Assembly: GCA_002269645.1 (NCBI GenBank)
Contig: NIVC01000556.1
Coordinates: 124,001-188,000, forward strand
DNA length: 64,000 bases
DNA from: Macrostomum lignano
Lineage: Eukaryota
Reading direction: 5' to 3'
Made by a program: the position numbers and the translations under genes. Numbering within the stretch: the first letter of the stretch is position 1; each line of letters starts with the position of its first letter. The notes under the pieces are model-generated. The model was given only the letters and a program-made list of their open reading frames with translations, was not told where the DNA came from and searched no databases. Positions 1 to 63,544 of this stretch are shown here, one piece after another.

Positions 1-352
<352 letters not shown>

Positions 353-28927: not shown

Positions 28928-28962
<35 letters not shown>

Positions 28963-30564
28963 ATTCTTCTTTGGTGCCGTTTAAATTGGCTCTCACCGCG
29001 GCGTCCAACTAGCTCCGGGATGCTGTCCAGACTAGAGGGAGTCGGAGCGGCGGCGACTGCTCCAACGGCGGGTTCAGCGGTGCCGGCAGCTGCCGCCGCG
29101 ACAGCCCTTCTTTGATGATGTCGAAGTCGCCAGATAAGCCAGGAGCGACGGAAGTCCGGGTGGTTTGGCGGCTGCTGGTGCTGCTGCTGGTAGTAGCTGG
29201 GCCAGCCGCAGGCTAACCCGGGTTTTCGCGATCTGCGCCGCAGCAAGGAAGAAAAATCCTCGTCTCCAAAAATATCAAAGTAGAAAATATTGCGAATAAA
29301 AAAGAATGAGAAGAAATGCGAAGATGAGGGCGTGGCAAGAAAATTGATTCGTGCGACTTGGGGAGGCGGGGGTGCATTTTGGGATGCGGGGCATCACGCA
29401 GCAAGACATTGTGAGATGTCCGCCTTTTTGAGCGACAGGGTGAGAGGGGACGAAGGCCTGTCTGAGAGCCTTCGTTTTCAGTGCCAGTTCTCATGTGACT
29501 GACTGTACATGTACAGGCGTACTGTGGTATATTGAATGAGTTGGAATTGTTGCGTTCAAATTTCAACAGATTCTATTTTTAGTTGCTAATCAGTTTCTAC
29601 ATCAGTTGATACTAGCTCATAGACTCAGATGATGCTGGCTCATAGACTCAGATGATGCTGGCTCATAGACTCAGATGATGCTGGCTCATAGACTCAGATG
29701 ATGCTGGCTCATAGACTCAGGTGATACTGGCTTATAGAATCAGATGATGCTGGCTCATAGACTCAGGTGATGCTGGCTCATAGAATCAGATGATACTGGC
29801 TCATAGACTCAGGTGATGCTGGCTCATAGAATCAGATGATACTGGCTCATAGACTCAGGTGATGCTGGCTCATAGAATCAGATGATGCTGGCTCATAGAC
29901 TCAGGTGATGCTGGCTCATAGACTCAGGTGATGCTGGCTCATAGACTCAGATGATGCTGGCTCATAGACTCAGGTGATGCTGGCTCATAGACTCAGGTGA
30001 TACTAACGCATAGACTCAGGTGATGCTAGCACATAAGCTCAGATGATACTAATAGACTAAGATGACACTAGCTCATAAAAGATGAAACTAGCTCATAAAA
30101 GATGACACTAGCTCATAAAAAGATGATACTAGCTCATAAACTAAGATGATACTAGCTTACTAGCTCATAGACTCAGATGATACTAACTCAAAAATAAGAT
30201 GATACTCTTATAAACTCGGATGATACTAATAAGCTCAGATGAGACTAGCTCATAAACTCAGTTGATACCCGCTCATAGACTCAGATGATGTTCTTATAAA
30301 CTCAGATAATACCACTTCGTAACTCATAAACTCAGATGATGCTCTTTTAAACCCAGATGATACTAAAAAACTCAGATGATACTAATAACCTGTCACAAAC
30401 AAGAGCCTAGAACATCAGCCCTGCACTTACATGACCCTCCGTTTAAACGCTGCAGCATGTCGCCAAGTTCTGTCAGTTTGATATCGATGGCTTCCAGTGG
30501 CTTGCTGCGTGGCCTGCTGTTGCTGCAGCTCTGACGATGGCTCACCAGATTTGTTTTGCTGCAT
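26622..30564 (-). CDS. Orphan low-complexity Q/A/S/G-rich protein, about 852 aa, 3 exons
   Basis: Exons 30564-30431 (ATG with in-frame TAA 6 nt upstream, AT|GTAAGT, phase 2), 29232-28153 (phase 2-2, AA|GTATTT) and 27966-26622 (TGA); 2559 nt, phase-consistent. Short globular-looking islands plus a predicted coiled coil (VEELQNDIDEVRMTIHSLTDQVRGDIERMEGQL). No family recognised. Confidence 0.72.
27990..28112. repeat. (TGAC)n microsatellite filling most of orphan intron 2
   Basis: Directly visible. Confidence 0.97.
29612..30385. repeat. 23-bp minisatellite (catagactcagatgatgctggct), decaying 3'
   Basis: Directly visible; lies in orphan intron 1. Confidence 0.92.
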
Positions 30565-32351: not shown

Positions 32352-39656
<7,305 letters not shown>

Positions 39657-43808: not shown

Positions 43809-46800
43809 TCAGCCGTTGCAGCGGAACTCGTTGGGCATCAGGCGCAGCACAGCGAAGCCCTGACCGCCTGGCAGGACGTTCGCTCCGCCGGCGAAAGCGC
43901 AACCAACTCCGCCACAGAAAGAGCCGCCGCCGCCTCCGCAGTTGCCGAACGCTGTCCCGGCGCCGCCACCGCTGAAGCCGCCGCCGGCGCCTGAAGCGCC
44001 ACTTCTTTTGTAATTTCCGCCGCCACCGCCGCCGCCACCAAAGCCGCCGACGCCGGTGTTGTTGTCAGCGGCGACTCCGCCAAGCCAGTTGTCGTCGCGA
44101 CTGCCGCCAGTTCCGCCCTCGTAGCTGCTGGTCCTGGGCCACGTCCAGCCGCCGAGCCATCCGGCGCCGCAGCCGCCCCAGACTCTGGTGTCGTTGTCAC
44201 CGCGGGGCGAGCTGCTCCCAGAGGCTCCGTTGGCGCCACCGAAGCCCGTGTAGGTGTACGTTCCACCAGTCGAGTCGATGCCGTTGACGCCCGGATTTCC
44301 TGGCTTGCCTGTTGCGGGAATATAAATTTGGATTAGGCGTTTCTTAGAAAGCTACAGAATCAAAATTTGGATTAGTCGTTTCTTAGAAAGCTACAAAATC
44401 CAAATTTGAATTAGGTGTTTCTTAGAAAGCTACAGAATCAAAATTTGGATTAGGCGTTTCTTAGAAAGCTGCACAATACAAACTTAAATTAGTCGTTTTT
44501 TAGAAAGCTACAGAATCAAAATTTGGATAAGGCGTTTCTTAGAAAGCTGCACAATACAAACTTAAATTAGTCGTTTCTTAGAAAGCTACAGAATCAAAAT
44601 TTGGATTAGGCGTTTCTTAGAAAGTTGCACAATACAAACTTAAATTAGTCGTTTTTTAGAAAGCTACAGAATCAAAATTTGGATTAGTCGTTTCTTAGAA
44701 AGCTACAGAATATAAATTTTGATTAGTCGTTTCTTAGAGAGCTATACAATATAATAGCTATAGAATTTTCGATTTCTGACTGAGAAGGTCCTGACGTGAA
44801 ACCAGTTGAGGTATTACCCACGTATGATCGGATACTACATTAGCTTAACTGACAAAATTCCAGCTGCATAGACACTCATGATACAGTCCTACTATACTCT
44901 AAACTAGTGTAGTGAGCCGCTAGTTTATGGTTAGGCGTCGCCCTTGTCAGCTGCTCCCTTGCCCTCCCTTTGGGTTGCTGTCTGCCGCTGGTCAGCTTCC
45001 CGCCCCCCTTTCGTTTGCCTGTCGCCCCCCCCCGTGTCCTTTCCGCCCTGCTGCGTCTCCGTTCTCAGCCCTCAGTCTCTCGACTATGGGCTGTCTCTGT
45101 TTCGCTTCCGTCCCGTTTTTCCCTGTCTTGTGAGCTAGTCACATGACAGTATTTTCTTGCGTTCTTTGAGTCTTAAAGTGCAGTAAACATGTTTACTGCA
45201 CTCGCTGGCCCTGTTTACCGGGTGAGTCACATGCTTTCGGACCCCTCCCTTCTCTAAGGAGAGGAGTGACTCATGTTGCTAAAAATAGCAACTGAGTCAC
45301 AGCCATGTGCACTCTGCCGGGGACCCTCAAGTGACGTCAGTTCTAAAAATAGAACAAGTCACGAGGTCTTCCGCGCGCTTGTACCCTGCCCGAGACTCTC
45401 GAGTGACGTCAGTTCTAAAAATAGAACAAGTCACGAGGTCTTCTGCGCGGGTGTTTCCCGGCTATAAATAGGAGCCCTCTCCCCATTGTTTCCGTCAAGG
45501 AGTCGTCTTCCCGAGCCTCGAGTTTGAGTTTCCAGTTCCTAAGTCTGAGACTGAGTGTCAGCCCGTCTGTGTGCGTTAAAGTTCTGTTCTTATTGGTCTA
45601 CCTGAGACCCTACTAAAGCAAACCCCAAGCCTACGAGAGGCTAACTCAGCCCTCCCTGTACCATCCAAGCCCGGCAGGTGCTGCTGACGAGACGCCTTGT
45701 ACGTTGAACTGCAAATCTGCACCTGGTGCTGAGTTCGTTGACTTCATTATTTCGTTCCGACGGGAAGCTCACCTCACCGAAGGCCGAGACCTGAAGGAAC
45801 TGGTGGCAGCACTACCTACGCTACTGAGAGAGTTAAGAAGGCTTCCGAGTGAGAAGACGGAGAGCCCAAATCACCGTGCTAGACAGCAGGAGAAGCACAG
45901 GTACAACACTAGCTACTTGAATGTAGCAAGCCATAAGTAACAATCGCAGAAAATCGATAGGCATCCAAGCAAAAGCATACCATCACATTTGTCAGAAGGG
46001 CCACCGCCACCTCCGGCGGACAGATACAGCAAATTCGCGCCTCCGCTGCCGCCATCTGGCGAGTGCACGAAGGTGCCACCGCCTCCGCCGGCCCCGGCAT
46101 TTTTGCAGCAAGCCGGGCCGCCCGCCTGACCGACAATGATGTGCAGCTCAGTGCCCACCGTCAGTAAAAAGAAGCCCGACGCTCGGGCTCCTTTGCCGCC
46201 GGGTCGTCCGTAGAACGCACTGCTGCCGCCTTTGGCTCCAGCGGCCTCGAGGTTGTAGCAGCCAGTTGCCGGGGTGACAAACTTTTGGACACTGCCGCTT
46301 CGGCCTGTACCTGAGTCTGAATTGGTTGGTTGGTTGGTTGGTTGGTTGGTTGGTTGGTTGGTTGGTTGGTTGGTTGGTTGGTTGGTTGGTTGGTTGGTTG
46401 GTTGGTTGGTTGGTTGGTTGGTTGGTTGGTTGGTTGGTTGGTTGGTTGGTTGGTTGGTTGGTTGGTTGGTTGGTTGGTTGGTTGGTTGGTTGGTTGTTGT
46501 TGTTGTTACTCCCGGCCGGTTGGATCCGGGGGGCGTGTCTGCGCCCCTACCGTGCGGAGGAAATCGAGCGCGCGGAGGCCGTCCGTCGAGAGGACGGCCA
46601 GGGACGGTTTTGGCCCAAGGATGCGGGCCCGAAGGTCGTCAAGGGCCCGGCAGTGCAGGAGGACGTGGGCCACGTCTTCGTCGGCGGCCCCGCAGCGGGG
46701 GCAGGTGGCGGCGGTGTCCAGGCCGATCCGGTGCCGATACCAGCGCAGGAGCGGTGAGTGGCCCGTGCGCAGCTGGGCGAGGGTCACCGCGTCGGCCCGG

Positions 46801-49800
46801 TTAAGGCGTGGCCGCGGGGCGGCGATGGCGGTTGCCAGACGGTGGGTGGCGCAGTGCGGGTCGGCCACGTTGGCTTCGCGGGTGCGCTCGGCGAGGACCC
46901 GGCGGAGGGCGGCCCGTGCAGAACCGAAGCCGATCGGCGTCTCGTCCTGGGGGAGGCCGGCCGCGGTCTTGGCGGTGACGTCCGCAGCATCGTTCCGCCG
47001 GAGGTCGCAGTGGCTAGGGACCCATTGCAGCCAGATGGGGAAGCGGGCGGCGACGTGGGTCAGCAGCGTCCAGATCTCCCGGCACGCTGGCGAGGAGGAC
47101 TTGGACGGTCCCTTCTCGAGGGCTCGGAGCAGGGACTGCGAGTCCGTCAGGCAGCGGAGGCCGCTCAGGGAGGCAAGGTCCGGCCTGGAGGCGGCGTGCT
47201 GAAGCCCCAGCCGGAGAGCCGACTCCTCGGCACGGAAGGAGGAAGAGTAACGGCCCGCAGCCTGCGACAGGTGGACTGGCGGCGCGGTCTTGCTGAAGAT
47301 GACCGCCCCCGCTCCGCCGTTGAGGGTGCCCCCGGAGGCTGAACCGTCTGTCCAGAGTTCCAGGTCGGCGGGCGGGAGGCTCGCCAGCGTCTCCAGCGCG
47401 GCCAGCTTTCTGACGTGGGGCGCGTCCTCTCGGGAGGTCGCGGTCAGGAGGTCGCAGCGGATGATGACCCGGCTGGTGTCGGACCATGGCGGCGGAGGGA
47501 GGTTCTCCTGCTCCCGGGGGAGGGGGGCCAGGCCGGCGGCGGCGCTCAGGTGCTGCGCCGAGTCGCGCCAGTTCCTGCGGAAGGCCCCAGGCTCCCCGTG
47601 AGCGCGCAAGCGGGGCGTAGAGGTCTTGCCCGCTGCAGCGCGGAGCGGAGTCGGTTGTCGGTGACGGAGGGCTCGCTCGAACAGGGCTGCGCCTGCCACC
47701 TCCGCTCTGGTCGCCAGGGGCACGAGGTCGGCCTCAGCCAGGAGGGCGCCAATGGCGGTCGAGCGGCAGCAGCCAGTGATGACGCGAGCGGCCGATCGAT
47801 GTGCAATCTCGACTTCTTCCCGGCAGGAGTCGGACGCGAAGGTGAGCCACGTGGAGGCGCCGTGGAGCGCGGCCGCCTCCGCGTAGGTGCGGTAGAGCTG
47901 GGCGAGGCGCTGGCCGTCCTGGCCCCAGTCGCGGCCCGCGAGGCAGCGTAGGACGCCGGTGCGCTGCTGGAGGGCGCGGCGCCGGAGCTTGGCGTGGTGG
48001 CGGAAGGTCAGCCGGGAGTCGAGGTGCACTCCCAGGAGCCTCGGGTGCAGCTCGAACGGAGCTGGCGAGTCGCCGAGGAGGATGCGCGGCTGGACCTTTC
48101 CGTTGACCTCCCGGGGGTCGAGCGAGAAGAAAGCGACGACCGACTTGGTGCGGCTCAGGTCCACCTTCCAGGTTTGGGACCAGCGCACGAGCCCGTCGGC
48201 CGCCGGTTGCAGGGCCCGCTCACACTCCCGAGGGGTGGTCCCTTGCGCGCCGAAGGTGCTGTCGTCGGCGTACACCAGCGTGAGGCAGTTCTTGGGGGCG
48301 CCGTCCAGGAGGTCGTCCATGTAGATCACCCACAGGATCGGGGCAAGGACCGACCCTTGCGGCAGCCCCTCGGAGAACACGGTTGGCTTGCAGGCCGCAC
48401 TAACCCACCGCACGAAGGCCCTCCTGTCGGAGAGAAATCCCTTGAGCCAGCGGATGAGGCAGGTGGGGATCCCCTTCCGACCGAGCTTGACGATGAGGGC
48501 GGCTCTCCAGACGCGGTCGTAGGCTCTGGAGAAGTCTGCAAGGAGCAGGGCGGTGCGGGCTGCCGGCTTCTTGGCCTGGAAACCGTCAAAAATGTACTGG
48601 GCCGCCGCGGCGATGTGCTCCTCCGTGGAGCGGCCCTGACGGAAACCGGCTTGCGACGGGTGGAGGGCGTCATTTGCCTCGAGGATGTAGGACAGCCGCT
48701 CGTTCACCATCTTCTCGGCGAGCTTGCCCAGGCAGCTGAGGAGGCTGATAGGGCGGAAGCTGGATGTCAGGCCGGCTGGCTTGTCCGATTTGGGGATCGG
48801 GCGGATCTCCGCAAGGCGCCACGGGGCGGGCACCTCCCCCGTCCTCCACGAGAGGTTCAGGAGGTCCAGGAGGCAGCGGAGCCCCAGGTCGGACAAATGC
48901 TTCAGCATGATGTTCGCGACCCCGTCCGGTCCCGGGGCCGAGCGGTCCGGCAGGCGCACCAAGGCGCGGCGGAGGGCGTCGGGCTGGAAGTCGGAGCAGG
49001 GGCCGCTGCGGAGGCCTTGGCAGCTGCAGGGGGCGCGGAGCGTGTGACGGGCTTCTTGGATGACCGGCCGGTCTACCGCCTTGTTCTTGGGGAGCCTGCT
49101 GACGGCGGCGTACTCCCGGCAGAAAAGCGCGGCCTTCTGTTTGTCGGAGACGGCCGATGCCCCCGTGGAGCCCTGGATGGCAGCCGACGAGGGGGTGCCC
49201 TGGGACCGTCCGTCGAGGGCCCGGATGATCCGCCAGAGGTCGGTGGAGCACAGGTCGTGACCCGGGTCGGTGATGAAATCACGCCACAGCGACTCCTTGG
49301 CGCGGCAGATGGCGTGAGCAGCCGCGGCGGCAGCAGCCTGGTACGCGGCCGAGAGCGCCGGGTCGTCCGGGCTCGCGCGAAGCGCTTCGAGCGCTGCGCG
49401 GCGGGCGGTGCAGGCCGCCTCGGCTTCCGGGCACCACCAGGCGATCGGGGCGCGCCGGCAGCCTCTCGGGATGGCCGCCTTAGCGGCGCTGGTGACGGCG
49501 GACGCGAACCGGCTGGCGGCGACGGGCACCGTGCGTGGGGGGCGCTCCGGCCAGCTGGCCAGGGCCTCGTCGAGGGTCCGCTGGAACAGGTCCCAGTCCG
49601 CCTTGTGGTAGGCGTACCGCGTCAGGCGCTTGGAGCTGGAGCGGGCCGGGCCGGAGGCTGCGATGTCGATGATGATCGGCAGGTGGTCTGAGCCGATGTG
49701 CTCCCCGGTTCGCCACTCAATCCGGTCTTGCCAGGAGGCGTGGGCGAAGGAGACGTCAGGGGAGCTCGGCAGGCCGCGGGGGCTGATCCTAGTTGGGGAG

Positions 49801-52518
49801 CCGTCGTTCAGAGCGACCAGGTCGTAGGTCGTCGCCCAGTCTTCGAGGGCCCTGCCCAGCTCGTCGTCGTCCGCCGAGGCGTCCCACATCCCGTGGTGGG
49901 CGTTGAAGTCGCCCAGCACCAACGAGTCCCGTGAAACGGGGATCCAGTCGGGCTCGAAGGCGTCCGTGCGGCCGTCTGCGGCGCGGACCGGCGGGAGGTA
50001 GATGTTGATCACATCCAGGGGGCGCGGAAGCCGGGGGTCGTGGATACGGAGGCCCGAGGCTTCGGCGGACGTGGCGTGGGTGACGAGCTCGCCTAGTGGA
50101 AGGTCGGCGAATTGAATGCCCTCCTTGACAAGGAAGCAGACGCCCCCGTGGTGGGTTCTGGCTGCCTCCCCGTCGCGGCCGGTGTTGCGGTCCTTCCGGC
50201 CAGCGATCTGCCACCCTTTGAGGCGTGGGGCCGCTGTGTGGCCGGACAGGTTCGTCTCCTGGATGCAGGCGACGTCGGCGCCCTGCTTCTCCAGGAAGTG
50301 GAGCAGTTCCAGCTTGCGGGAGCGGAGCCCTGCCGCGTTGAGCTGGACGATGCGGAAAGCCGCCCCGCTGTTGTTCGGCGCCCCCGCCCGCGCTGGTTGC
50401 GCCATCAGGGGGGGGGGTGCCGGCGCGGGGTTCGGGGGAGGTGGAGTCGTGGCCGTTGGCGTCTGGTGGGTGCCAGTGGGGCCTGCAGCCGCGGAGGGGG
50501 CCGGAGTCTCAGCGGGCTGCGGCGCTGAAGCGGCAGGCTGGGGGGCACAGGTGGGGCAGTGCCACGGCGCATTGTCCCGGTGGAGCCGGTTGATAGCCGC
50601 AATAGTGAGGCGGGAACAGCGGCGGTGCCACCACAGGCCGCAGCCGGAGCAGCGGGTGGAGTAGCCCCTGGCCACCTCCTCGGCACAGCCTCCGCACGGG
50701 AAGGCCGGCCCAAGGTTGGACTCGACGTCTCCAGCTCTGAGAAGCAGCTGAGCCAGGTGAGCTGGGAGGTCTGGCTCAGCGTGGAAAAACCCGGGGCGCT
50801 CGAAGACCCTCGCACGGGTCCAGGGTGGTGGCTGCACTTGGCCGGGCGAACCCGGACGGTCCCGCCGCGTGAAGGCGGCAGCCATGGGAAGCGCGCGAGC
50901 GCGCTCCGGGAGGCGGAACCTCCCGACCTGGTTGGTTGGTTGGTTGGTTGGTTGGTTGGTTGGTTGGTTGGTTGGTTGGTTGGTTGGTTGGTTGGTTGGT
51001 TGGTTGGTTGGTTGGTTGGTTGGTTGGTTGGTTGGTTGGTTGGTTGGTTGGTTGGTTGGTTGGTTGGTTGGTTGGTTGGTTGGTTGGTTGGTTGGTTGGT
51101 TGGTTGGTTGGTTGGTTGGTTGGTTGGTTGGTTGGTTGGTTGGTTGGTTGGTTGGTTGGTTGGTTGGTTGGTTGGTTGGTTGGTTGGTTGGTTGGTTGGT
51201 TGGTTGGTTGGTTGGTTGGTTGGTTGGTTGGTTGGTTGGTTGGTTGGTTGGTTGGTTGGTTGGTTGGTTGGTTGGTTGGTTGGTTGGTTGGTTGGTTGGT
51301 TGGTTGGTTGGTTGGTTGGTTGGTTGGTTGGTTGGTTGGTTGGTTGGTTGGTTGGTTGGTTGGTTGGTTGGTTGGTTGGTTGGTTGGTTGGTTGGTTGGT
51401 TGGTTGGTTGGTTGGTTATTTGGAAGGCTCTTGCATCACCAGAGCAAGCAACTCACTGTAGAACATCATGGCCAGCAGTCTGGCATTCAGCTGACTATAA
51501 AAATCCGGTGCAATCCACACTCTCTGGAAGCCGCTGTCCGAGCCAGTTGACAGCACCCTGACCACGTGACTCTCCGACGTCCCAGCAGCTCCTGTTGATT
51601 CGTCATTGATGATTAGCAGGCGACAGTTGATGGCTTTGTTAGTTGCTATGGCAACCACTATAGCCGCGCACAGATTCAAGGAGCAGGAGGCGAGGCAGTC
51701 AATGTCAGACTGGGCATTCGGATCTGTTAGAAATGTGCTGCTCACAGCAGAGCTGATAGTGATTGAATCAGTCACAGACTTATAGTTCCTCGCTGTCATC
51801 TCAGGTTGAGCAGTAGAGCTTTCTGAAAGTCATTAGAAAGACATTAGAAAGAACCACTAACAGAACATAATAATCTAATTGCTAATCCATAGCCTATCTA
51901 TGGATTAACGAATAGAATGGATTGCTAATCCATAGTTTATATGTGGATGAACGAATAGAATGGATTGCTAATCCAATGCCTACATGTAGATTAACGAATA
52001 AAATGGATTGCTAATCCATAGCCTATATGTGGATGAACGAATAGAATGGATTGCTAATCCAATGCCTACATGTAGATTAACGAATAAAATGGATTGCTAA
52101 TCCATAGCCTATATGTGGATTAACGAATAGAATGTATTAGTATTGGAATCTATAGCCTACACTCGTATATGTGGAGTAACAATAGAATGGATCGCTAATC
52201 CATTGCCTATATATGGATTAACGAATAGAATTGGATTGCTGTCTTGACTCTGCAAAAACTTAGTTCAACTTACCTGCAATTATTGCCAGACTAAAAACTA
52301 TAAAAAACATTATAAAAGCGTTTAAACAAACTTCTTCTGACTTTATTTTTAGGTTAATGCAAAAATTTTCCAAGTCTTGCGCACAGCGCATTGGATTTGC
52401 TGAAACCTCGTATTTATTAAGACAGACACTTACCTGTACTCGCCTCAACAAACGGCTTGTTGCTAAGAGCTCTCAATAAAATCCAATTGTTATCCTCTGA
52501 ATGGCAACATTCCAGAAT
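43809..52518 (-). CDS. PAN/apple-like + ALK/LTK-type glycine-rich-domain protein (no TM, no kinase); 5' end unresolved
   Basis: Exons 52518-52434 (tentative), 51822-51457, 46316-45981 and 44308-43809 (TGA), joined through phase-1 introns. Translation: [18 protein letters not shown]...INCRL (PAN-like), [23 protein letters not shown]...[25 protein letters not shown]...GGGGGTFV...[10 protein letters not shown], then [10 protein letters not shown]...[10 protein letters not shown]...GGGGGSF. This matches the ALK/LTK TNF-like/Gly-rich layout. The last exon is absent from the ORF track. Confidence 0.8.
44320..44750. repeat. ~39-bp minisatellite (gaatcaaaatttggattaggcgtttcttagaaagctaca)
   Basis: About 11 copies in two alternating variants; starts about 10 nt from the acceptor at 44309. 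Confidence 0.92.
44908..45908 (+). mobile_element. Solo LTR (1001 bp), Gypsy-like, 4-bp TSD CTAG
   Basis: ctag|TGTAG...CAACA|ctag (TSD at 44904-44907 and 45909-45912). TATAAATA at 45463-45470, a 41-bp direct repeat (45331-45371 and 45403-45443), and AP-1/CRE motifs. No gag/pol sequence. Confidence 0.78.
45463..45470 (+). promoter_or_regulatory. TATA box of the solo LTR
   Basis: TATAAATA lying downstream of clustered TGA(C/G)TCA and TGACGTCA motifs. Confidence 0.6.
46322..46493. repeat. (TTGG)n/(CCAA)n microsatellite, 3' flank of the LINE
   Basis: Perfect repeat, about 43 units. Confidence 0.98.
46506..50885 (-). CDS. Retrotransposon polyprotein: 2A-like, PHD finger, AP endonuclease, reverse transcriptase, RNase H, CCHC Zn finger (1459 aa, intact)
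   Basis: APE: [29 protein letters not shown]: [40 protein letters not shown]. RNaseH: WTDGS, FRAEE, TDSQS, WVPSH..RNDAAD. C-terminal CPRC..ED..HVLLHC. Confidence 0.96.
50829..50920 (-). ncRNA. Candidate HDV/CPEB3-like self-cleaving ribozyme at the LINE 5' end
   Basis: Manual fold: P1 GGUUCC/GGGACC, P2 UGGCUGC/GCAGCCA, P3 GCC/GGC, L3 UUCACGC, GU junction, P4 CCGGG-UUCG-CCCGG, J4/2 CCAA. Confidence 0.65.
50929..51418. repeat. (TTGG)n/(CCAA)n microsatellite, 5' flank of the LINE
   Basis: Perfect repeat, about 122 units. Confidence 0.98.
51878..52240. repeat. 43-bp minisatellite containing an ATGGATT-GCT-AATCCAT inverted repeat
   Basis: About 8 copies visible. Confidence 0.88.
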
Positions 52519-54278: not shown

Positions 54279-57200
54279 ATATATTTTGCATGTCCAATTG
54301 TCTATGGTTATTCAGTAGTGAATTCAACAATACATGAAGCTATATTTTGCATGTCCAATTGTCTATGGTTATACAGTAGTGAATTCAACAATACATGAAG
54401 CTATATTTTGCATGTCCAATTGTCTATGGTTATACAGTAGTGAATTCAACAATACATGAAGCTATATTTTGCATGTCCAATTGTCTATGGTTATACAGTA
54501 GTGAATTCAACAATACATGAAGCTATATTTTGCATGTCCAATTGTCTATGGTTATTCAGTAGTGAATTCAACAATACATGAAGCTATATTTTGCATGTCC
54601 AATTGTCTATGGTTATACAGTAGTGAATTCAACAATACATGAAGCTATATTTTGCATGTCCAATTGTCTATGGTTATACAGTAGTGAATTCAACAATACA
54701 TGAAGCTATATTTTGCATGTCCAATTGTCTATGGTTATACAGTAGTGAATTCAACAATACATGAAGCTATATTTTGCATGTCCAATTGTCTATGGTTATT
54801 CAGTAGTGAATTCAACAATACATGAAGCTATATTTTGCATGTCCAATTGTCTATGGTTATACAGTAGTGAATTCAACAATACATGAAGCTATATTTTGCA
54901 TGTCCAATTGTCTATGGTTATACAGTAGTGAATTCAACAATACATGAAGCTATATTTTGCATGTCCAATTGTCTATGGTTATACAGTAGTGAATTCAACA
55001 ATACATGAAGCTATATTTTGCATGTCCAATTGTCTATGGTTATACAGTAGTGAATTCAACAATACATGAAGCTATATTTTGCATGTCCAATTGTCTATGG
55101 TTATACAGTAGTGAATTCAACAATACATGAAGCTATATTTTGCATGTCCAATTGTCTATGGTTATTCAGTAGTGAATTCAACAATACATGAAGCTATATT
55201 TTGCATGTCCAATTGTCTATGGTTATACAGTAGTGAATTCAACAATACATGAAGCTATATTTTGCATGTCCAATTGTCTATGGTTATACAGTAGTGAATT
55301 CAACAATACATGAAGCTATATTTTGCATGTCCAATTGTCTATGGTTATACAGTAGTGAATTCAACAATACATGAAGCTATATTTTGCATGTCCAATTGTC
55401 TATGGTTATTCAGTAGTGAATTCAACAATACATGAAGCTATATTTTGCATGTCCAATTGTCTATGGTTATACAGTAGTGAATTCAACAATACATGAAGCT
55501 ATATTTTGCATGTCCAATTGTCTATGGTTATTCAGTAGTGAATTCAACAATACATGAAGCTATATTTTGCATGTCCAATTGTCTATGGTTATACAGTAGT
55601 GAATTCAACAATACATGAAGCTATATTTTGCATGTCCAATTGTCTATGGTTATACAGTAGTGAATTCAACAATACATGAAGCTATATTTTTGCATGTCCA
55701 ATTGTCTATGGTTATTCAGTAGTGAATTCAACAATACATGAAGCTATATTTTGCATGTCCAATTGTCTATGGTTATACAGTAGTGAATTCAACAATACAT
55801 GAAGCTATATTTTGCATGTCCAATTGTCTATGGTTATACAGTAGTGAATTCAACAATACATGAAGCTATATTTTTGCATGTCCAATTGTCTATGGTTATT
55901 CAGTAGTGAATTCAACAATACATGAAGCTATATTTTGCATGTCCAATTGTCTATGGTTATACAGTAGGGAATTCAACAATACAAGAAACTATATTTTGCA
56001 TGTCCAATTGTCTATGGTTATTCAGCAGTGAATTCAACAATACATGAAGCTATATTTTGCATGTCCAATTGTGTATGGTTATTCAGTAGTGAATTCAACA
56101 ATACATGAAGCTATATTTTTGCATGTCCAATTGTCTATGGTTATTCAGTAGTGAATTCAACAATACATGAAGCTATATTTTGCATGTCCAATTGTCTATG
56201 GTTATGCAGTAGTGAATTCAACAATACATGAAGCTATATTTTGCATGTCCAATTGTCTATGGTTATTCAGCAGTGAATTCAACAATACATGAAGCTATAT
56301 TTTTGCATGTCCAATTGTCTATGGTTATACAGTAGTGAATTCAACAATACATGAAGCTATATTTTGCATGTCCAATTGTCTATGGTTATACAGTAGTGAA
56401 TTCAACAATACATGAAGCTATATTTTGCATGTCCAATTGTCTATGGTTATACAGTAGTGAATTCAACAATACATGAAGCTATATTTTGCATGTCCAATTG
56501 TCTATGGTTATTCAGCAGTGAATTCAACAATACATGAAGCTATATTTTGCATGTCCAATTGTCTATGGTTATACAGTAGTGAATTCAACAATACATGAAG
56601 CTATATTTTGCATGTCCAATTGTCTATGGTTATTCAGCAGTGAATTCAACAATACATGAAGCTATATTTTTGCATGTCCAATTGTCTATGGTTATACAGT
56701 AGTGAATTCAACAATACATGAAGCTATATTTTGCATGTCCAATTGTCTATGGTTATACAGTAGTGAATTCAACAATACATGAAGCTATATTTTGCATGTC
56801 CAATTGTCTATGGTTATTCAGCAGTGAATTCAACAATACCTGAAGCTATATTTTGCATGTCCAATTGTCTATGGTTATACAGTAGTGAATTCAACAATAC
56901 ATGAAGCTATATTTTGCATGTCCAATTGTCTATGGTTATACAGTAGTGAATTCAACAATACATGAAGCTATATTTTGCATGTCCAATTGTCTATGGTTAT
57001 ACAGTAGTGAATTCAACAATACATGAAGCTATATTTTTGCATGTCCAATTGTCTATGGTTATTCAGTAGTGAATTCAACAATACATGAAGCTATATTTTG
57101 CATGTCCAATTGTCTATGGTTATACAGTAGTGAATTCAACAATACATGAAGCTATATTTTGCATGTCCAATTGTCTATGGTTATACAGTAGTGAATTCAA

Positions 57201-59031
57201 CAATACATGAAGCTATATTTTTGCATGTCCAATTGTCTATGGTTATTCAGTAGTGAATTCAACAATACATGAAGCTATATTTTGCATGTCCAATTGTCTA
57301 TGGTTATACAGTAGTGAATTCAACAATACAAGAAACTATATTTTGCATGTCCAATTGTCTATGGTTATTCAGCAGTGAATTCAACAATACATGAAGCTAT
57401 ATTTTGCATGTCCCATTGTGTATGGTTATTCAGTAGTGAATTCAACAATACATGAAGCTATATTTTTGCATGTCCAATTGTGTATGGTTATTCAGTAGTG
57501 AATTCAACAATACATGAAGCTATATTTTGCATGTCCAATTGTCTATGGTTATGCAGTAGTGAATTCAACAATACATGAAGCTATATTTTGCATGTCCAAT
57601 TGTCTATGGTTATTCAGCAGTGAATTCAACAATACATGAAGCTATATTTTGCATGTCCAATTGTCTATGGTTATACAGTAGTGAATTCAACAATACATGA
57701 AGCTATATTTTGCATGTCCAATTGTCTATGGTTATACAGTAGTGAATTCAACAATACATGAAGCTATATTTTGCATGTCCAATTGTCTATGGTTATACAG
57801 TAGTGAATTCAACAATACATGAAGCTATATTTTGCATGTCCAATTGTCTATGGTTATACAGTAGTGAATTCAACAATACATGAAGCTATATTTTTGCATG
57901 TCCAATTGTCTATGGTTATTCAGTAGTGAATTCAACAATACATGAAGCTATATTTTGCATGTCCAATTGTCTATGGTTATGCAGTAGTGAATTCAACAAT
58001 ACATGAAGCTATATTTTGCATGTCCAATTGTCTATGGTTATTCAGCAGTGAATTCAACAATACATGAAGCTATATTTTGCATGTCCAATTGTGTATGGTT
58101 ATTCAGTAGTGAATTCAACAATACATGAAGCTATATTTTGCATGTCCAATTGTCTATGGTTATACAGTAGTGAATTCAACAATACATGAAGCTATATTTT
58201 GCATGTCCAATTGTCTATGGTTATACAGTAGTGAATTCAACAATACATGAAGCTATATTTTGCATGTCCAATTGTCTATGGTTATTCAGTAGTGAATTCA
58301 ACAATAGATGAAGCTATATTTTGCATGTCCAATTGTCTATGGTTATACAGTAGTGAATTCAACAATACATGAAGCTATATTTTGCATGTCCAATTGTCTA
58401 TGGTTATTCAGCAGTGAATTCAACAATACATGAAGCTATATTTTGCATGTCCAATTGTGTATGCTTATTCAGTAGTGAATTCAACAATACATGAAGCTAT
58501 ATTTTGCTTGTCCAATTGTCTATGGTTATGCAGTAGTGAATTCAACAATACATGAAGCTATATTTTGCATGTCCAATTGTCTATGGTTATACAGTAGTGA
58601 ATTCAACAATACATGAAGCTATATTTTGCATGTCCAATTGTCTATGGTTATACAGTAGTGAATTCAACAATACATGAAGCTATATTTTGCATGTCCAATT
58701 GTCTATGGTTATTCAGTAGTGAATTCAACAATACATGAAGCTATATTTTGCATGTCCAATTGTCTATGGTTATACAGTAGTGAATTCAACAATACATGAA
58801 GCTATATTTTGCATGTCCAATTGTCTATGGTTATTCAGCAGTGAATTCAACAATACATGAAGCTATATTTTTGCATGTCCAATTGTCTATGGTTATTCAG
58901 TAGTGAATTCAACAATACATGAAGCTATATTTTGCATGTCCAATTGTCTATGGTTATACAGTAGTGAATTCAACAATACATGAAGCTATATTTTGCATGT
59001 CCAATTGTCTATGGTTATTCAGTAGTGAATT
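54279..59031. repeat. 61-bp satellite array, about 78 copies
   Basis: Unit tatattttgcatgtccaattgtctatggttatacagtagtgaattcaacaatacatgaagc (register shifts 1 nt per 60-nt line). Very homogeneous; each unit carries GAATTC and CAATTG. Confidence 0.98.
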
Positions 59032-59761
59032 AAGCGCAGTATATATTAAGAAAACTCTGATTTGAATAAATTTCAGCTGTTTAAAGCAAATTTATTCTTA
59101 CATTTTAAAGAGATCCGAGATCTGCATTTATTTAGTTTAAATATTGTTTAAATTTTAAACAAGAGCTTAAAGTTTAGACGAATGGTTAACTATAGAAAAA
59201 ACTTTTAATAGCAATTACGCTCGTAGTAAATAGAAAAAAACGAAAAAAGAAACACTTAGCTAGAGACACAGAAAATTGACAAGATCGCATGCAAACTATA
59301 TGCGCATAATACTACTGCCGTTGAGTTATACAGTAGGAACACTATACTAATGCAAATATATGACAATTGCAACACAAAGCACTGCAAGCAGAGTAAAGAA
59401 AAAGCAAACAGAAAATTGTCAATATTCTAATAAATAAATTCGAGATAAAAGTCTACTAAAATTGCAATAAAAGATTGTAACTAACTGAATGAATTACCAC
59501 AGTGGAGTAAGTAGAGTACACTAGAATAAAAAACAGAAGCTGCCGAGCAAATATTATAATAATTTGCTTTTTAAAATCACATAACTTACGTAGTTGTGTG
59601 TTGTAAATGAAGTGACTAGAAATAATAGGGTTTTGTTAAAGGCGTGCCAGCTGACACCAATATAAGTATCCGTGACACCCCTGACACAAGATGGAGAACT
59701 CGACAACACAATATGAAACCTCTGACATACAATATAGAGCCACTGAAACAATATTGCAACT

Positions 59762-60455
59762 GCTGACACAATACAGAGCCAGAGCCACTGACACAATACA
59801 GAACCCCTGACACACAGTTCAGAACCCCTGACACACAATACAGAGCCACTGACACACAATACAGAGCCAGAGCCCCTGACACACAATACAGAGCCAGAGC
59901 CCCTGACACACAATACAGAGCCCCTGACACACAATACAGAGCCCCTGACACACAATACAGAGCCCCTGACACAGTACAGAGCCACTGACACACAATACAG
60001 AGCCACTGACACAATACAGAACCCCTGACACACAATACAGAGCCCCTGACACAGTACAGAGCCACTGACACACAATACAGAGCCCTGACACACAATACAG
60101 AGCCACTGACACACAATACAGAGCCCCTGACACACAATACAGAGCCACTGACACACAATACAGAGCCACTGACACACAATACAGAGCCAGAGCCCCTGAC
60201 ACACAATACAGAGCCCCTGACACACAATACAGAGCCCCTGACACACAATACAGAGCCCCTGACACAGTACAGAGCCACTGACACACAATACAGAGCCACT
60301 GACACAATACAGAACCCCTGACACACAATACAGAGCCACTGACACACAATACAGAGCCACTGACACACAATACAGAATGCTTGACACACAATACAGAGCC
60401 CCTGACACACAATACAGAATCCCTGACACACAATACAGAACCGCTGACACACAAT
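59762..60455. repeat. ~22-bp minisatellite (ctgacacacaatacagagcccc) with length variants
   Basis: Directly visible; source of the Cys/Val-rich ORFs. Confidence 0.95.
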
Positions 60456-60652
60456 ATACAAAACCACCGACACGATACGGAGCTCTTGACAAGTATTTTT
60501 ACTGTTCATTAGGTAAACTCATTTGCGATAGATAGCTACACTGTACACAGAGACAGATAGGATGGAAGCCATATTTGAAATAGAGTTGCATTAGCTATGG
60601 AAAACATGGAAGATTGTATAGCTTTTTGAGACAATAGCTGGTAGACAGTAAT

Positions 60653-61088
60653 TCATTTAAGTCCGGAAGTTGAACCGCCACAATTCTGCCCATTGCCCAA
60701 TCGACCATTGTTATTATTTAGCTGTTGTTGCTGATAAAAAGAGCCGGACTCTGTAGCTGGTTCTGCATCAGCGATGGCGGAGGCTGCAGCGGCAGCTCTA
60801 GCCATCTGTGATCGAGTTCGCACAGTTGACGGATGCTCGGAGCCGAGGCTAATCGCGTAGATTTCTGTCGCTCGTCTGTAGTGATTCGATGCTTCCGTTG
60901 CTCGACCCTGTATGGGGGTTACATTTATGGTAATTTTCACAACTATTTAGCGGGATATTCATAGAATTTATAGAGGTTACAGTTTTCTGGGGCAGCAGAA
61001 TTTTGTACTTTTAGCTAGAATGGTTATCTCTTCATTGTTGGGTTGTTTCAAATAGTGAATGTATAGATAGATAGATAGATAGATAGAC

Positions 61089-61120
<32 letters not shown>

Positions 61121-61121
61121 G

Positions 61122-61156
<35 letters not shown>

Positions 61157-61177
61157 GGATAGATAGATAGATAGATG

Positions 61178-61222
<45 letters not shown>

Positions 61223-61265
61223 ATAGACAGATAGATAGAAAGAAGATAGATAGATAGATAGATAG

Positions 61266-61324
<59 letters not shown>

Positions 61325-63544
61325 TAGATAGATAGATGGATAGATAGATAGACAGATAGACAGACACATAGATAGCATTGGCAGATAACACTCACTTGAC
61401 TCAAGCACAGCGCCGCTAATCCGCACAGCTGCCTAGCAACATCCGGATGCTGGTTACCGAGTAGCGACTCCCTAATAGCCAGAGCTCTCGCACAGAGCGA
61501 CTCGGCCACAGCTGGCCGGCCCATTCTGCCTTGCAGCGCGGCCAGATTAGTGAGGCTGGCGGCCACCGCCGGACTGTCGTTACCGTAGGCCCGTTCCCGG
61601 ATGCGCAGCGATTCGGAGCAGAGCGCCGCTGCTTCGGCTAGACGGCCGCGTCGACGACTGACGCTAGAGGCGAGGCTTAACGCGGCCGCCAGATCGGGAT
61701 GCTCCGGACCGGGGTCGCGTCGGAGCTGCGCCAAGGAGCGCTGGCAGAGCGCGGCGGCGAGGTCCAGACGGCCAAGACTGACGCACTGACCAACCTGCGC
61801 GTTTAGTAGTACCCGTCTTAGAGACATTCCCAGGTAACTAATTAAGTTTTGAGGGCCTCTTTGAGCCCTCTATATCCTGCAGTAGATTCTCAGTCGGCTT
61901 TACAATTACCCGCTTCTTCAGTCAACGCTGCAAAACCCCTTTAAATTATGTAGTCACTTAGTTAGTTTGCAAGGGGACTTTATAGGGGCGGATTTAATTG
62001 GAGGGGCGGCCGCCTTCCCCTTGTGGCTGGCAATGATGGCGCCCCTTTTCCATTTGTGCTGGCAGTCTCAATATTATCATATTCAGAACTATAAAACTTT
62101 GAATGGACGGAGTTATTAAATCCGAAACAGGGAAAGAGACACAGTAGTGCCAGAAAAACAAAAGCATAGAAGTTGCCTCGCTAACTTCATGCTATTAGAT
62201 CAGGTAGTCATCAAAAAAGGTCCTTATCGCCTTCAGTTTGCTCATTATGGCGCCCCTCTCGTGTACATTATGGTGTCCCTCTAGTGTACATTATGGTGTC
62301 CCTCTAGTGTATATTATGGCGCCCCTCTAGTGTACATTATGGTGTCCCTCTAGTGTACATTATGGTGTCCCTCTAGTGTACATTATGGTGTCCCTCTAGT
62401 GTATATTATGGCGCCCCTCTAGTGTACATTATGGTGTCCCTCTAGTGTACATTATGGTGTCCCTCTAGTGTACATTATGGTGTCCCTCTAGTGTACATTA
62501 TGGTGTCCCTCTAGCGTACATTATGGCGCCCCTCTAGTGTACATTATGGTGTCCCTCTAGTGTACATTATGGCGCCCCTCTAGTGTACATTATGGCGCCC
62601 CTCTAGTGTACATTATGGTGTCCCTCTAGTGTACATTATGGTGTCCCTCTAGTGTACATTATGGTGTCCCTCTAGTGTACATTATGGTGTCCCTCTAGCG
62701 TACATTATGGCGCCCCTCTAGTGTACATTATGGTGTCCCTCTAGTGTACATTATGGCGCCCCTCTAGTGTACATTATGGCGCCCCTCTAGTGTACATTAT
62801 GGTGTCCCTCTAGTGTACATTATGGTGTCCCTCTAGTGTATAATGTAGCCTAGCACCCACACTCTTATGGTAAAAATCCGCCGTTTCCGCATTTTATATT
62901 TCAAAATCCGCCTCTGGGACTTTAAGCGAGAAGCCAGAAGGCAAGTAGAAATGACCATGACCAACGCACACGCTCACACGGGCTTTTACAACGGCCCTGA
63001 GTTTCTGCTATCACTCAAGCAATATCCTGTGTCCAAACCTCACCATTCGATGCAAGCTTCTTAGTCGGACTGGCACACCCTCGGAATCCGCGGAATCCAG
63101 CGAAGCAAATGAGGACAAAGGAGTAGCGGCTGAAGCGGAATTGCTGGACACGGCAGCCACAGATGCAGTTGACGTCGCCGATGATCCTTCAAATTTTGCT
63201 GACGAATCGCTTGGACCAACTTTTCCACTGCCATTAGGGGCACAACGATAATTCTTTAACTCGCGCAGAAATCTTAACTGTTCGCATTCGACATCAACTT
63301 CGGCGGCTCTGCATTCCGTTTGACGCAGGGCGTCCTGTGCGTCGGTTAGACTGCAACGTAGGCTGGCATTCTCGCGCGCTAAAGAGCGCGCTTGGGCGCG
63401 CAGTTCGGCACGCTGAGACTCTAACTGCAGGATGCGTTCGGCTGACACAGCCAATAACTGGGCTGCATCGGATGCCTCTGAAGCTGAAGTTGATGAACTA
63501 AACTCCTTCAGGTGCTCAACAACTGAGCAAGCTGTATGGAGAAG
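60653..63544 (-). CDS. Divergent kinesin-light-chain-like protein (heptad repeat + about 4 TPRs); N-terminus not resolved
   Basis: Exons 63544-63044, 61794-61396 and 60907-60653 (TAA), phase 0-0. [23 protein letters not shown] aligns with KLC [22 protein letters not shown]; [11 protein letters not shown] with IPARLRTLHNL; [22 protein letters not shown] with KRALEIREKVLGKDHPDVAKQL. Confidence 0.85.
61065..61372. repeat. (GATA)n microsatellite in a KLC-like intron
   Basis: Directly visible. Confidence 0.97.
61983..62916. mobile_element. hAT-type non-autonomous element (934 bp) with 8-bp TSD GGACTTTA and internal 23-bp minisatellite
   Basis: TSD at 61975-61982 and 62917-62924. TIRs TAGGGGCGGATTT and CAGAGGCGGATTT (11/13 match). 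Internal (tctagtgtacattatggtgtccc)n at ~62250-62845. Confidence 0.85.

What the first reader, a model, noticed from the sequence alone, without database searches (positions are those of the whole stretch)
46322..51418. Intact Ingi-like LINE apparently targeted to (CCAA)n microsatellites
Seen: the full-length element is flanked on both sides by pure (CCAA)n (about 43 units 3', about 122 units 5') with base-sharp junctions, inside a host intron and in host orientation. Established: sequence-specific non-LTR elements target simple repeats in other clades (TRAS/SART on TTAGG, Waldo on AC, Koshi/Kibi on TTC, Dong on TAA). I know of no CCAA-specific Ingi/I-group family. Inference: a microsatellite-homing retrotransposon using abundant intronic tetranucleotide arrays as safe harbours. 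One copy cannot prove specificity, and a TSD cannot be read inside a repeat.
Basis: partly seen in the sequence, partly recalled or inferred. Interest (0 to 1): 0.85.

Follow-up and report, generated by a model that had tools for sequence, protein, structure and literature searches.

The report
LINE retrotransposon inside a CCAA repeat
A young, apparently working jumping gene (a LINE) sits in the middle of a perfect CCAA repeat inside a flatworm gene's intron, but with only this one copy available there is no proof that the family seeks out such repeats.

Summary
On the minus strand, an uninterrupted 1459-aa ORF (2A-like motif, PHD finger, APE endonuclease, RT, RNase H, CCHC knuckle) lies between AA(CCAA)121CCA and (CCAA)43. 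Both arrays are 100% pure.

The stop codon is followed directly by (CAA)4, and ten relatives (27-50% identity) also end in short microsatellites, six of them (CAA)n-type. So (CAA)4 is the element's own tail and the CCAA arrays lie outside it. The element most likely inserted into a pre-existing intronic array.

The host is Macrostomum lignano, whose genome is 15% simple or tandem repeats. Long tetranucleotide arrays, including an intronic one, are common in this window.

Homing is unproven. No second copy of the family could be reached, since the nearest relative is only 50% identical. Most relatives have unique 3' flanks, and one has an ordinary 10-bp target-site duplication. Three relatives do have trinucleotide arrays just upstream.

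My best reading is target-primed reverse transcription helped by CAA/TTG pairing, which gives a preference rather than strict specificity. "Ingi-like" was not tested; the RNase H domain places the element in the I group only. "Intact" needs a caveat, because the 2A motif reads NLGP instead of NPGP. Interest is moderate.

The parts
50929..51417 (-). 5' flanking array AA(CCAA)121CCA, 489 nt, no interruption
50886..50928 (-). 5' UTR of the element (43 nt, GGTCGGGAGGTTCCGCCTCCC...). It contains two short palindromes but has no significant fold and no Rfam match.
46506..50885 (-). Single ORF of 1459 aa, ATG to TAA. GC is 71% and GC3 is 86%.
50706..50750 (-). 2A-like motif [15 protein letters not shown] (residues 46-60). 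Leu58 (CTT, 50712-50714) replaces the Pro that is invariant in relatives (NPGP).
   Evidence: PMC3708506 and PMC3894237 for the motif
50547..50696 (-). PHD-type zinc finger (residues 64-113)
   Evidence: weak Pfam PHD; Pygopus PHD, E=8e-5
49671..50345 (-). APE-type endonuclease domain (residues 181-405). The E210, N294, D326, N328, H330, D377 and S399-D400-H401 columns are invariant among relatives.
48132..48797 (-). Reverse transcriptase domain (residues 697-918), with YADD at 872-875
46959..47366 (-). RNase H domain (residues 1174-1309). D1180, E1220, D1248 and D1302 are kept.
46650..46703 (-). C-terminal CCHC knuckle (C1395, C1398, H1407, C1412), invariant among relatives
46494..46505 (-). 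The element's own 3' tail, (CAA)4, directly after the stop codon with no 3' UTR. The last CAA can equally be read as part of a CCAA unit, giving 3 nt of microhomology.
   Evidence: Matching tails in relatives.
46322..46493 (-). 3' flanking array, exactly (CCAA)43
46317..51456 (-). Inferred host intron (GTGAGT...TTCAG). Only 44 nt of it is neither array nor element. It joins the upstream exon in frame to an ALK/LTK glycine-rich-domain exon.
   Evidence: inference; no transcript data

Best explanation
This is a recent insertion of a single-ORF, RNase H-bearing (I-group) APE-type LINE. It appears able to encode its proteins. Its domain order is 2A-like motif, PHD finger, APE, RT, RNase H, CCHC knuckle. 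It has essentially no 3' UTR, and its own tail is (CAA)4.

It inserted by target-primed reverse transcription into a (CCAA)n array that already existed in a small intron of a Macrostomum lignano gene encoding an ALK/LTK glycine-rich domain.

Proposed mechanism (inferred):
- The endonuclease nicks the bottom strand (TTGG)n after TTG.
- The exposed ...TTG-3' end pairs with the terminal CAA of the RNA tail and primes cDNA synthesis.
- CAA-containing microsatellites in the sense orientation are therefore favoured landing sites.

This is a microhomology-assisted preference, not a demonstrated strict CCAA specificity.

What is shown: the anatomy, the tail homology with relatives, the purity of the arrays and the host identity. 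What is inferred: the order of events, the position of the nick and any preference.
For: - Anatomy and exact arrays.
- Tail homology. The stop codon abuts or nearly abuts a short microsatellite in ten relatives: L090 TAA(CAA)>=7, L085 (CAA)9, L086 (CAA)>=27, L087 (CAA)5, L002 (ACA)5, L084 (ACC)5(ACA)n, L083 TAA(GAA)4, L091 (AAG)5 and L001 TGA(GA)8. The C-terminal ...RPPD motif is shared with P0001 and P0009, so the 3' end is native.
- The sequence upstream of the 5' array is unique intron sequence (...CCTTCCAAAT). It carries no (CAA)n and no 3' element fragment, so the 5' array is not the tail of a recognisable upstream copy.
- Orientation and microhomology: CCAA contains CAA on the element's sense strand, and the junction CAA|CCAA is ambiguous over 3 nt.
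- Three of eight relatives have trinucleotide arrays immediately 5' of the element: L087 (CAA)>=25, which matches its own tail, L088 (CAG)13 and L084, which is CAA-rich.
- Tetranucleotide arrays of about 80 units are common in this window, and one lies in an intron-like gap.
- The host genome is 15% simple or tandem repeats (PMC5730564).
Against: - There is only one copy, so no preference can be measured.
- The combined array (165 units, 100% pure) is about twice as long as the other long tetranucleotide arrays in the window, and purer (79-88 units, 91-94% matches). That fits recent repeat synthesis or expansion linked to the insertion as well as it fits an old target.
- Relatives with (CAA)n tails mostly have unique 3' flanks (L085, L087, L002), and L083 has an ordinary 10-bp TSD. 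Tail pairing is therefore not sufficient to confine insertions to microsatellites.
- No CCAA array occurs in 668 kb of related loci.
Confidence: 0.5

Rival explanations
1. Strict (CCAA)n homing. The family's endonuclease, its RNA 3' end, or both, recognise (TTGG)n/(CCAA)n. Essentially all copies then sit in such arrays, as Waldo does in (ACAY)n or Koshi in (TTC)n.
For: - Both flanks are the same pure array in the sense orientation.
- The CCAA arrays lie outside the conserved (CAA)n tail, so they behave as target.
- Microsatellite-specific APE-type LINEs are known (PMC3812793, PMC4640811).
- CCAA arrays occur nowhere else in the 59 kb of window outside the finding, so a chance hit on this particular motif is improbable.
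Against: - Only a single copy is available.
- The relatives are not microsatellite-restricted.
- Known specific families lie in the R1, Tx1 and RLE-type clades (PMC4640811). The APE domain here gave no match to the solved R1Bm or TRAS1 endonucleases at E<=0.01.
- The finding was selected because it looked striking, and the host genome is very rich in simple repeats.
Confidence: 0.2
2. The arrays are made by the element or travel with it. The RNA tail would be (CAA)4(CCAA)n, either read through from a master copy or extended by RT slippage. The 5' array would be a previous tail-only (fully 5'-truncated) insertion at the same site.
For: - Both arrays are 100% pure and unusually long compared with the other long tetranucleotide arrays in the window.
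- Without the arrays and the element, the intron would be only 44 nt.
- Composite tails exist in a relative, L084 with (ACC)5(ACA)n.
- Very long tails or arrays touch relatives: L086 has >=27 units at its 3' end and L087 has >=25 units at its 5' end.
Against: - No relative has a CCAA tail, and none of the 668 kb of related loci holds (CCAA)>=4.
- Tails of relatives that have a unique flank are only 4-9 units long.
- The explanation needs two independent events at one site.
- Other pure or long tetranucleotide arrays exist in the window without any LINE.
Confidence: 0.13
3. Pure chance. A non-specific LINE happened to land in one of the very many microsatellites of this genome.
For: - 15% of the M. 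lignano genome is simple or tandem repeats (PMC5730564).
- Outside the finding, 27% of this window is tandem repeat and 4.5% is microsatellite of period 6 or less.
- Relatives insert into unique DNA.
Against: - The array type contains the tail's own trinucleotide and lies in the matching orientation.
- Three of eight relatives also have trinucleotide arrays at their 5' ends.
Confidence: 0.14
4. Assembly artefact. Reads from a LINE located elsewhere were joined into this intron through shared CCAA arrays.
For: - Both junctions lie in long perfect repeats.
- The element's composition (GC 71%) differs strongly from its surroundings (about 43%).
- The published assembly is described as difficult because of simple repeats (PMC5730564).
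Against: - It would need two false joins.
- Even then, the element's two ends would still abut CCAA arrays, so the main observation would survive.
Confidence: 0.03

Closest known systems
[quoted passage not shown]
   Same: The domain order is APE, RT, RNase H, followed by a C-terminal CCHC knuckle. The 3' tail is a microsatellite, as with the (TAA)n tail of the Drosophila I factor (own knowledge).
   Different: There is a single ORF with no ORF1, and the PHD finger is fused in front of APE. The clade within the group was not determined because no reference RT set was available.
Ingi/L1Tc of trypanosomes
   Same: Single ORF with APE, RT and RNase H. A 2A-like motif lies 40-80 aa from the N-terminus (PMC3708506, PMC3894237).
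   Different: The tail is (CAA)n, not A-rich. There is a PHD finger between 2A and APE. No HDV-like ribozyme or Pr77-type 5' end was detected. No trypanosome protein appeared among the homologues. The 2A motif is mutated to NLGP.
2A-PHD-APE single-ORF LINEs of sea urchin and amphioxus (Crack-17_BF, CR1-1/17/26_BF, STR-24/25/34/35_SP; PMC3708506)
   Same: The same N-terminal layout: a short leader, the 2A-like motif, a PHD finger, then APE.
   Different: Those elements belong to the CR1/Crack/L2/Rex1 clades, which are not among the RNase H-bearing clades listed in PMC4640811. This element has RNase H.
Microsatellite-specific LINEs: Waldo (ACAY)n, Mino (AC)n, Kibi (TC)n, Koshi (TTC)n, Dong (TAA)n, Togen (TG)n (PMC3812793, PMC4640811)
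   Same: This copy is flanked on both sides by one microsatellite in a fixed orientation. Waldo sets a precedent for a tetranucleotide target.
   Different: Those families were defined from many copies, and they belong to the R1, Tx1, R4 and NeSL lineages. Here there is one copy, the motif (CCAA) is different, and the relatives are not microsatellite-restricted.
Marine-metagenome relatives P0001-P0014 (TARA and other ENA/JGI contigs)
   Same: 27-50% identity over 63-95% of the protein, with the same domain order, the same 2A motif position and a stop codon abutting a microsatellite tail.
   Different: Their tails are followed by unique DNA in most cases. None touches a CCAA array. Their 2A motif is the canonical NPGP.

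Membership tests
APE-type non-LTR retrotransposon (LINE) | APE endonuclease N-terminal to an RT domain in one ORF, with no LTRs | tested here: met
   Pfam hits: Exo_endo_phos_2 9e-16 and RVT_1 1.7e-31. PDB best hits are the L1 ORF2p and R2 RT regions. No terminal repeats other than the flanking microsatellite.
I group (Ingi, I, Nimb, Loa, R1, Tad1, Loner, Outcast) | RNase H domain downstream of RT | tested here: met
   Pfam RNase_H 9.7e-09 at residues 1174-1309. The D/E/D/D columns are invariant. Group definition from PMC4640811.
I group | Placement within the group in an RT phylogeny | not testable with these tools
   No reference RT set was reachable: the supplement of PMC3708506 and the RTclass1 paper are not held. 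Named homologues were only a fungal protein and Chlamydomonas proteins.
Ingi clade | Single ORF without ORF1 | tested here: met
   One 1459-aa ORF starts 43 nt from the 5' end.
Ingi clade | N-terminal 2A-like recoding motif D(V/I)ExNPGP | tested here: inconclusive
   The motif is present at residues 46-60 but reads DVESNLGP. Relatives read NPGP. Activity was not tested.
Ingi clade | Pr77 / HDV-like ribozyme hallmark at the 5' end (PMC4035085, PMC3383444) | tested here: not met
   An Rfam scan of 46200-51500 at E<=5 found no ribozyme. The 5' fold has a z-score of -0.7.
Ingi clade | RT-phylogenetic clustering with Ingi/L1Tc | not tested
   No trypanosome proteins appeared among the hits, but the word-indexed search is not a phylogeny.
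Sequence-specific microsatellite-targeting LINEs | Most copies of the family are flanked on both sides by the same microsatellite in a fixed orientation | not testable with these tools
   Only this one copy is available, and it does meet the feature. No second copy was found in the window or in any collection.
Sequence-specific microsatellite-targeting LINEs | Close relatives share the target | tested here: not met
   There are no (CCAA)>=4 runs in 668 kb of related loci. 3' flanks are unique in L001, L002, L083, L085 and L087, and L083 has a 10-bp TSD.
R1 clade (home of Waldo and Mino) | Endonuclease similar to R1Bm/TRAS1 EN | tested here: inconclusive
   phmmer against all PDB sequences gave no APE-domain hit at E<=0.01. 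This argues against close kinship but is not a phylogeny.

The most novel reading that the evidence does not exclude
A previously undescribed I-group LINE family in the transgenesis-ready flatworm Macrostomum lignano preferentially or exclusively integrates into (CCAA)n arrays. It would do so using its 3'-UTR-less TAA(CAA)n end to pair with nicked (TTGG)n. This would be the first CCAA-targeting LINE, and the first microsatellite-homing lineage outside the R1, Tx1 and restriction-like-endonuclease clades. Its GC3 of 86%, against 49-68% in host exons, suggests it may be a recent horizontal arrival.
Probability: 0.3. Interest if true: 0.65.

Novelty: new member of a known kind. Interest (0 to 1): 0.38.

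Why it matters
If a census of the genome showed real CCAA homing, the list of microsatellite-targeting LINEs would gain a new clade and a new motif. It would also provide a simple model in which a 3'-UTR-less RNA whose tail pairs with the target sets the integration site. A natural safe-harbour integrase system would then be available in a flatworm that can already be made transgenic.

If the census shows ordinary dispersed copies, this is just one more young LINE that landed in one of the many simple repeats of an unusually repeat-rich genome.

Either way, the LINE group itself is poorly represented in annotated genomes and deserves a proper RT phylogeny. The group is defined by 2A, PHD, APE, RT and RNase H domains and by a stop codon that abuts a microsatellite tail, and it is known mostly from marine metagenomes.

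Tried and rejected
Search for further copies:
- blastn and tblastn of the element against the rest of the window found nothing.
- In the protein collection, the best hit is 50% identical and there is no M. lignano hit.
- The exact-protein lookup found no record.
- The JGI metagenome scan returned only relatives at 23-49% identity over their best matching segment, none of this family.

(CCAA)n next to relatives: there are no runs of 4 or more units in 668 kb of related loci.

5' ribozyme or promoter structure: there was no Rfam hit, and the fold is not better than shuffles.

Clade naming:
- Named homologues were uninformative, being one fungal protein and Chlamydomonas proteins.
- The PDB gave only the L1 ORF2p and R2 RT regions and the Pygopus PHD.
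- The Vingi paper, the RTclass1 paper and the RT reference supplement are not held.

Literature: no report of a CCAA-specific LINE was found. No report of LINEs homing to microsatellites in Macrostomum was found either.

Ideas rejected:
- The 5' array as the tail of a recognisable truncated upstream copy. No (CAA)n or element 3' fragment precedes it.
- The GC-rich region 26.6-29.2 kb as a second copy. It consists of two Q-rich host-like ORFs separated by an intron-like (GTCA)30.
- Reading a TSD or array phase across the insertion. Only the offset modulo 4 can be read.
Full report
**1. What is in the sequence**

The feature lies on the minus strand. Read 5' to 3' on that strand, it consists of the following.
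- Unique intron sequence ending ...GAGCCTTCCAAAT.
- AA(CCAA)121CCA at 51417-50929 (489 nt, no interruption).
- A 43-nt 5' UTR, GGTCGGGAGGTTCCGCCTCCCGGAGCGCGCTCGCGCGCTTCCC.
- A single ORF, ATG 50885 to TAA 46506, of 1459 aa.
- (CAA)4 at 46505-46494.
- Exactly (CCAA)43 at 46493-46322.
- TTCAG, followed by coding-like sequence.

A search for (CCAA)5 gives 158 hits against 0 expected from shuffles. All 158 lie in these two arrays, so no other CCAA array exists in the 64 kb.

**2. The element**

Pfam finds the following.
- APE endonuclease at residues 181-405.
- RT at residues 697-918.
- RNase H at residues 1174-1309.
- A weak PHD finger at residues 64-113.
- A weak zf-RVT match at the C-terminus.

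The PHD finger is confirmed by similarity to the Pygopus PHD in the PDB (E=8e-5).

Residues 46-60 read [15 protein letters not shown]. This is a 2A-like recoding motif at the position described for single-ORF LINEs (PMC3708506, PMC3894237).

I aligned the ORF with nine relatives. The endonuclease, RT (YADD), RNase H (D/E/D/D) and CCHC columns are all invariant and all present in the window copy. The C-terminus (...RPPD...) is homologous to that of P0001 and P0009, so the ORF end is native.

There is one blemish. Every relative that carries the 2A motif reads NPGP, whereas this copy reads NLGP (CTT at 50712-50714). Substitutions in this motif are reported to change recoding activity in L1Tc and other LINEs (PMC3894237, PMC3708506). 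"Intact" therefore holds for the frame and the enzymes, but not necessarily for 2A function.

The element is compositionally foreign.
- Its GC is 71% and its GC3 is 86%, against GC3 of 49-68% in three host ORFs.
- Its CpG observed/expected ratio is 0.97, against 0.76 in the rest of the window.

**3. The host and the intron**

A Cys-loop receptor exon at 36915-37616 is 99% identical to a UniRef protein of Macrostomum lignano. The window therefore comes from that flatworm or a very close relative.

On the minus strand there is a GTGAGT donor at 51456. It lies 39 nt upstream of the 5' array. A TTCAG acceptor at 46317 follows the 3' array directly. Splicing these two sites gives an in-frame join...[10 protein letters not shown]|NSGTGRSG.... 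The downstream exon matches the Pfam family ALK_LTK_GRD above its cut-off.

So "in a host intron, in host orientation" is a sound inference, although no transcript evidence was available. Of the 5140-nt intron, only 44 nt is neither array nor element.

**4. Tail or target?**

This is the key point, and relatives decide it. The nearest proteins are 27-50% identical and come mostly from marine metagenomes. I read the contigs of eleven of them. Ten reach the 3' end of the element, and in all ten the ORF ends at or within 16 nt of a short microsatellite:
- L090: TAA(CAA)>=7
- L085: (CAA)9
- L086: (CAA)>=27
- L087: (CAA)5
- L002: (ACA)5
- L084: (ACC)5(ACA)n
- L083: TAA(GAA)4
- L091: (AAG)5
- L001: TGA(GA)8

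More distant JGI relatives end in (AAT)-type runs.

The window's TAA(CAA)4 is therefore the element's own tail. It is the same as in L090, down to the stop codon. The CCAA arrays lie outside the element.

The sequence upstream of the 5' array shows no (CAA)n and no 3' fragment of another copy.

Such arrays are ordinary in this genome.
- Outside the finding, the window holds (TTAG)88, (GACA)83, (AGAT)83, (ATAG)79 and a pure (TGAC)30.
- The (TGAC)30 array sits in an intron-like gap between two long host-like ORFs.

**5. Is the family targeted to CCAA?**

This cannot be decided here, because every route to a second copy failed.
- There is no other copy in the window.
- There is no protein above 50% identity among 5.8 billion sequences, and none from M. 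lignano.
- There is no record of the exact protein.
- The metagenome scan returned no relative of the same family.

The base rate for landing in a repeat is not small. Simple and tandem repeats make up 15% of the M. lignano genome (PMC5730564). In this window, 27% of the sequence outside the finding is tandem repeat, and 4.5% is microsatellite of period 6 or less.

The wider group is not microsatellite-bound.
- After the tail, L001, L002, L083, L085 and L087 continue into unique DNA.
- L083 shows a 10-bp direct repeat, ACAGCAGTAC, at both ends, which is an ordinary target-site duplication.
- None of 668 kb of related loci contains (CCAA)>=4.

Three observations speak for more than chance.
- The array contains the tail's trinucleotide on the same strand.
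- The junction CAA|CCAA is ambiguous over 3 nt, as expected if a bottom-strand ...TTG-3' end primed on the terminal CAA of the RNA.
- Three of eight relatives have trinucleotide arrays immediately 5' of the element. L087 has (CAA)>=25, which matches its own tail. L088 has (CAG)13, and L084 has a CAA-rich tract.

I therefore favour a microhomology-assisted preference for CAA-containing repeats (confidence about 0.5) over the following alternatives.
- Strict CCAA homing (0.2).
- Arrays made by or carried with the element (0.13).
- Pure chance (0.14).
- Mis-assembly (0.03).

One fact does not fit the favoured reading comfortably. The combined array is 165 units long and 100% pure. The other long tetranucleotide arrays in the window are 79-88 units long and 91-94% pure. 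This fits recent repeat synthesis, expansion, or a long duplicated target as well as it fits an old array.

**6. Comparison with known families**

The APE-RT-RNase H order places the element in the I group as listed in PMC4640811.

The label "Ingi-like" rests only on the single ORF and the 2A motif. Against it stand the following points.
- The tail is (CAA)n rather than A-rich (own knowledge of Ingi/L1Tc).
- A PHD finger intervenes between 2A and APE.
- No HDV-like ribozyme was found (that hallmark is described in PMC4035085).
- No trypanosome protein appeared among the homologues.

The 2A-PHD-APE layout is known from CR1/Crack/STR elements of amphioxus and sea urchin (PMC3708506). Those clades are not among the RNase H-bearing ones. 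An RT phylogeny could not be run because no reference set was reachable.

Microsatellite-specific LINEs are well known: Waldo on ACAY, Mino on AC, Kibi on TC, Koshi on TTC, Dong on TAA and Togen on TG (PMC3812793, PMC4640811). The concept is therefore not new. A CCAA target and an I-group, non-R1 lineage would be new. I found no report of either.

**7. Verdict**

As it stands, this is a new member of a known kind of element, with a testable and moderately interesting hypothesis attached. A census of copies and an empty-site check in existing M. lignano assemblies would settle the question quickly.

Noticed in passing
window 54280-59031: A 61-bp satellite with about 78 copies at 97% identity. 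It occupies 4.7 kb just upstream (on the + strand) of the finding.
   Followed up: no
window 27991-28111 (minus strand (GTCA)30): A 100% pure tetranucleotide array fills an intron-like gap between two long Q-rich ORFs (26622-27914 and 28110-29246, minus strand). A pyrimidine tract and CAG follow it. This shows that intronic tetranucleotide arrays are ordinary in this genome.
   Followed up: partly
window 1-352, 1448-1780, 32472-32805, 61063-61375: Four long tetranucleotide arrays, (TTAG)88, (GACA)83, (AGAT)83 and (ATAG)79, each with 91-94% matches. Tandem repeats cover 27% of the window outside the finding.
   Followed up: partly
window 21222-22052 and 59616-60509: These ORFs give Pfam hits (T4 gp5 C-terminal trimerisation; grass antifreeze beta roll). 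They coincide with a 24-bp minisatellite (21238-22032) and a 21-bp minisatellite (59722-60456), so the hits are most likely repeat artefacts and not genes.
   Followed up: partly
window 36915-37616 (+) and 61048-61827 (-): Host gene pieces. The first is a Cys-loop (nicotinic-type) receptor exon, 99% identical to a Macrostomum lignano UniRef protein. The second is a TPR_12/NPHP3-like ORF.
   Followed up: partly
window 46506-50928: The element's composition is far from the host's. Its GC is 71% and GC3 86%, against 49-68% GC3 in host ORFs. Its CpG observed/expected ratio is 0.97, against 0.76. Its nearest relatives come from marine metagenomes. This could mean a recent horizontal arrival, but that was not tested.
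   Followed up: no
L084 4590-7377: The tail of this relative, (ACC)5(ACA)n, runs straight into a 5'-truncated LINE of a different family (RT plus RNase H, with no nucleotide similarity to the first copy). Its 5' flank is CAA-rich, so this is a nest of LINEs joined through microsatellites.
   Followed up: partly
L083 145-154 and 4806-4815: A 10-bp direct repeat, ACAGCAGTAC, flanks this 29%-identical relative. It is a candidate target-site duplication in unique DNA.
   Followed up: yes
window 51878-52240 and 44324-44744: A 43-bp tandem repeat (8 copies) and a 39/78-bp tandem repeat (about 11 and 5 copies) lie on either side of the gene segment that holds the finding.
   Followed up: no
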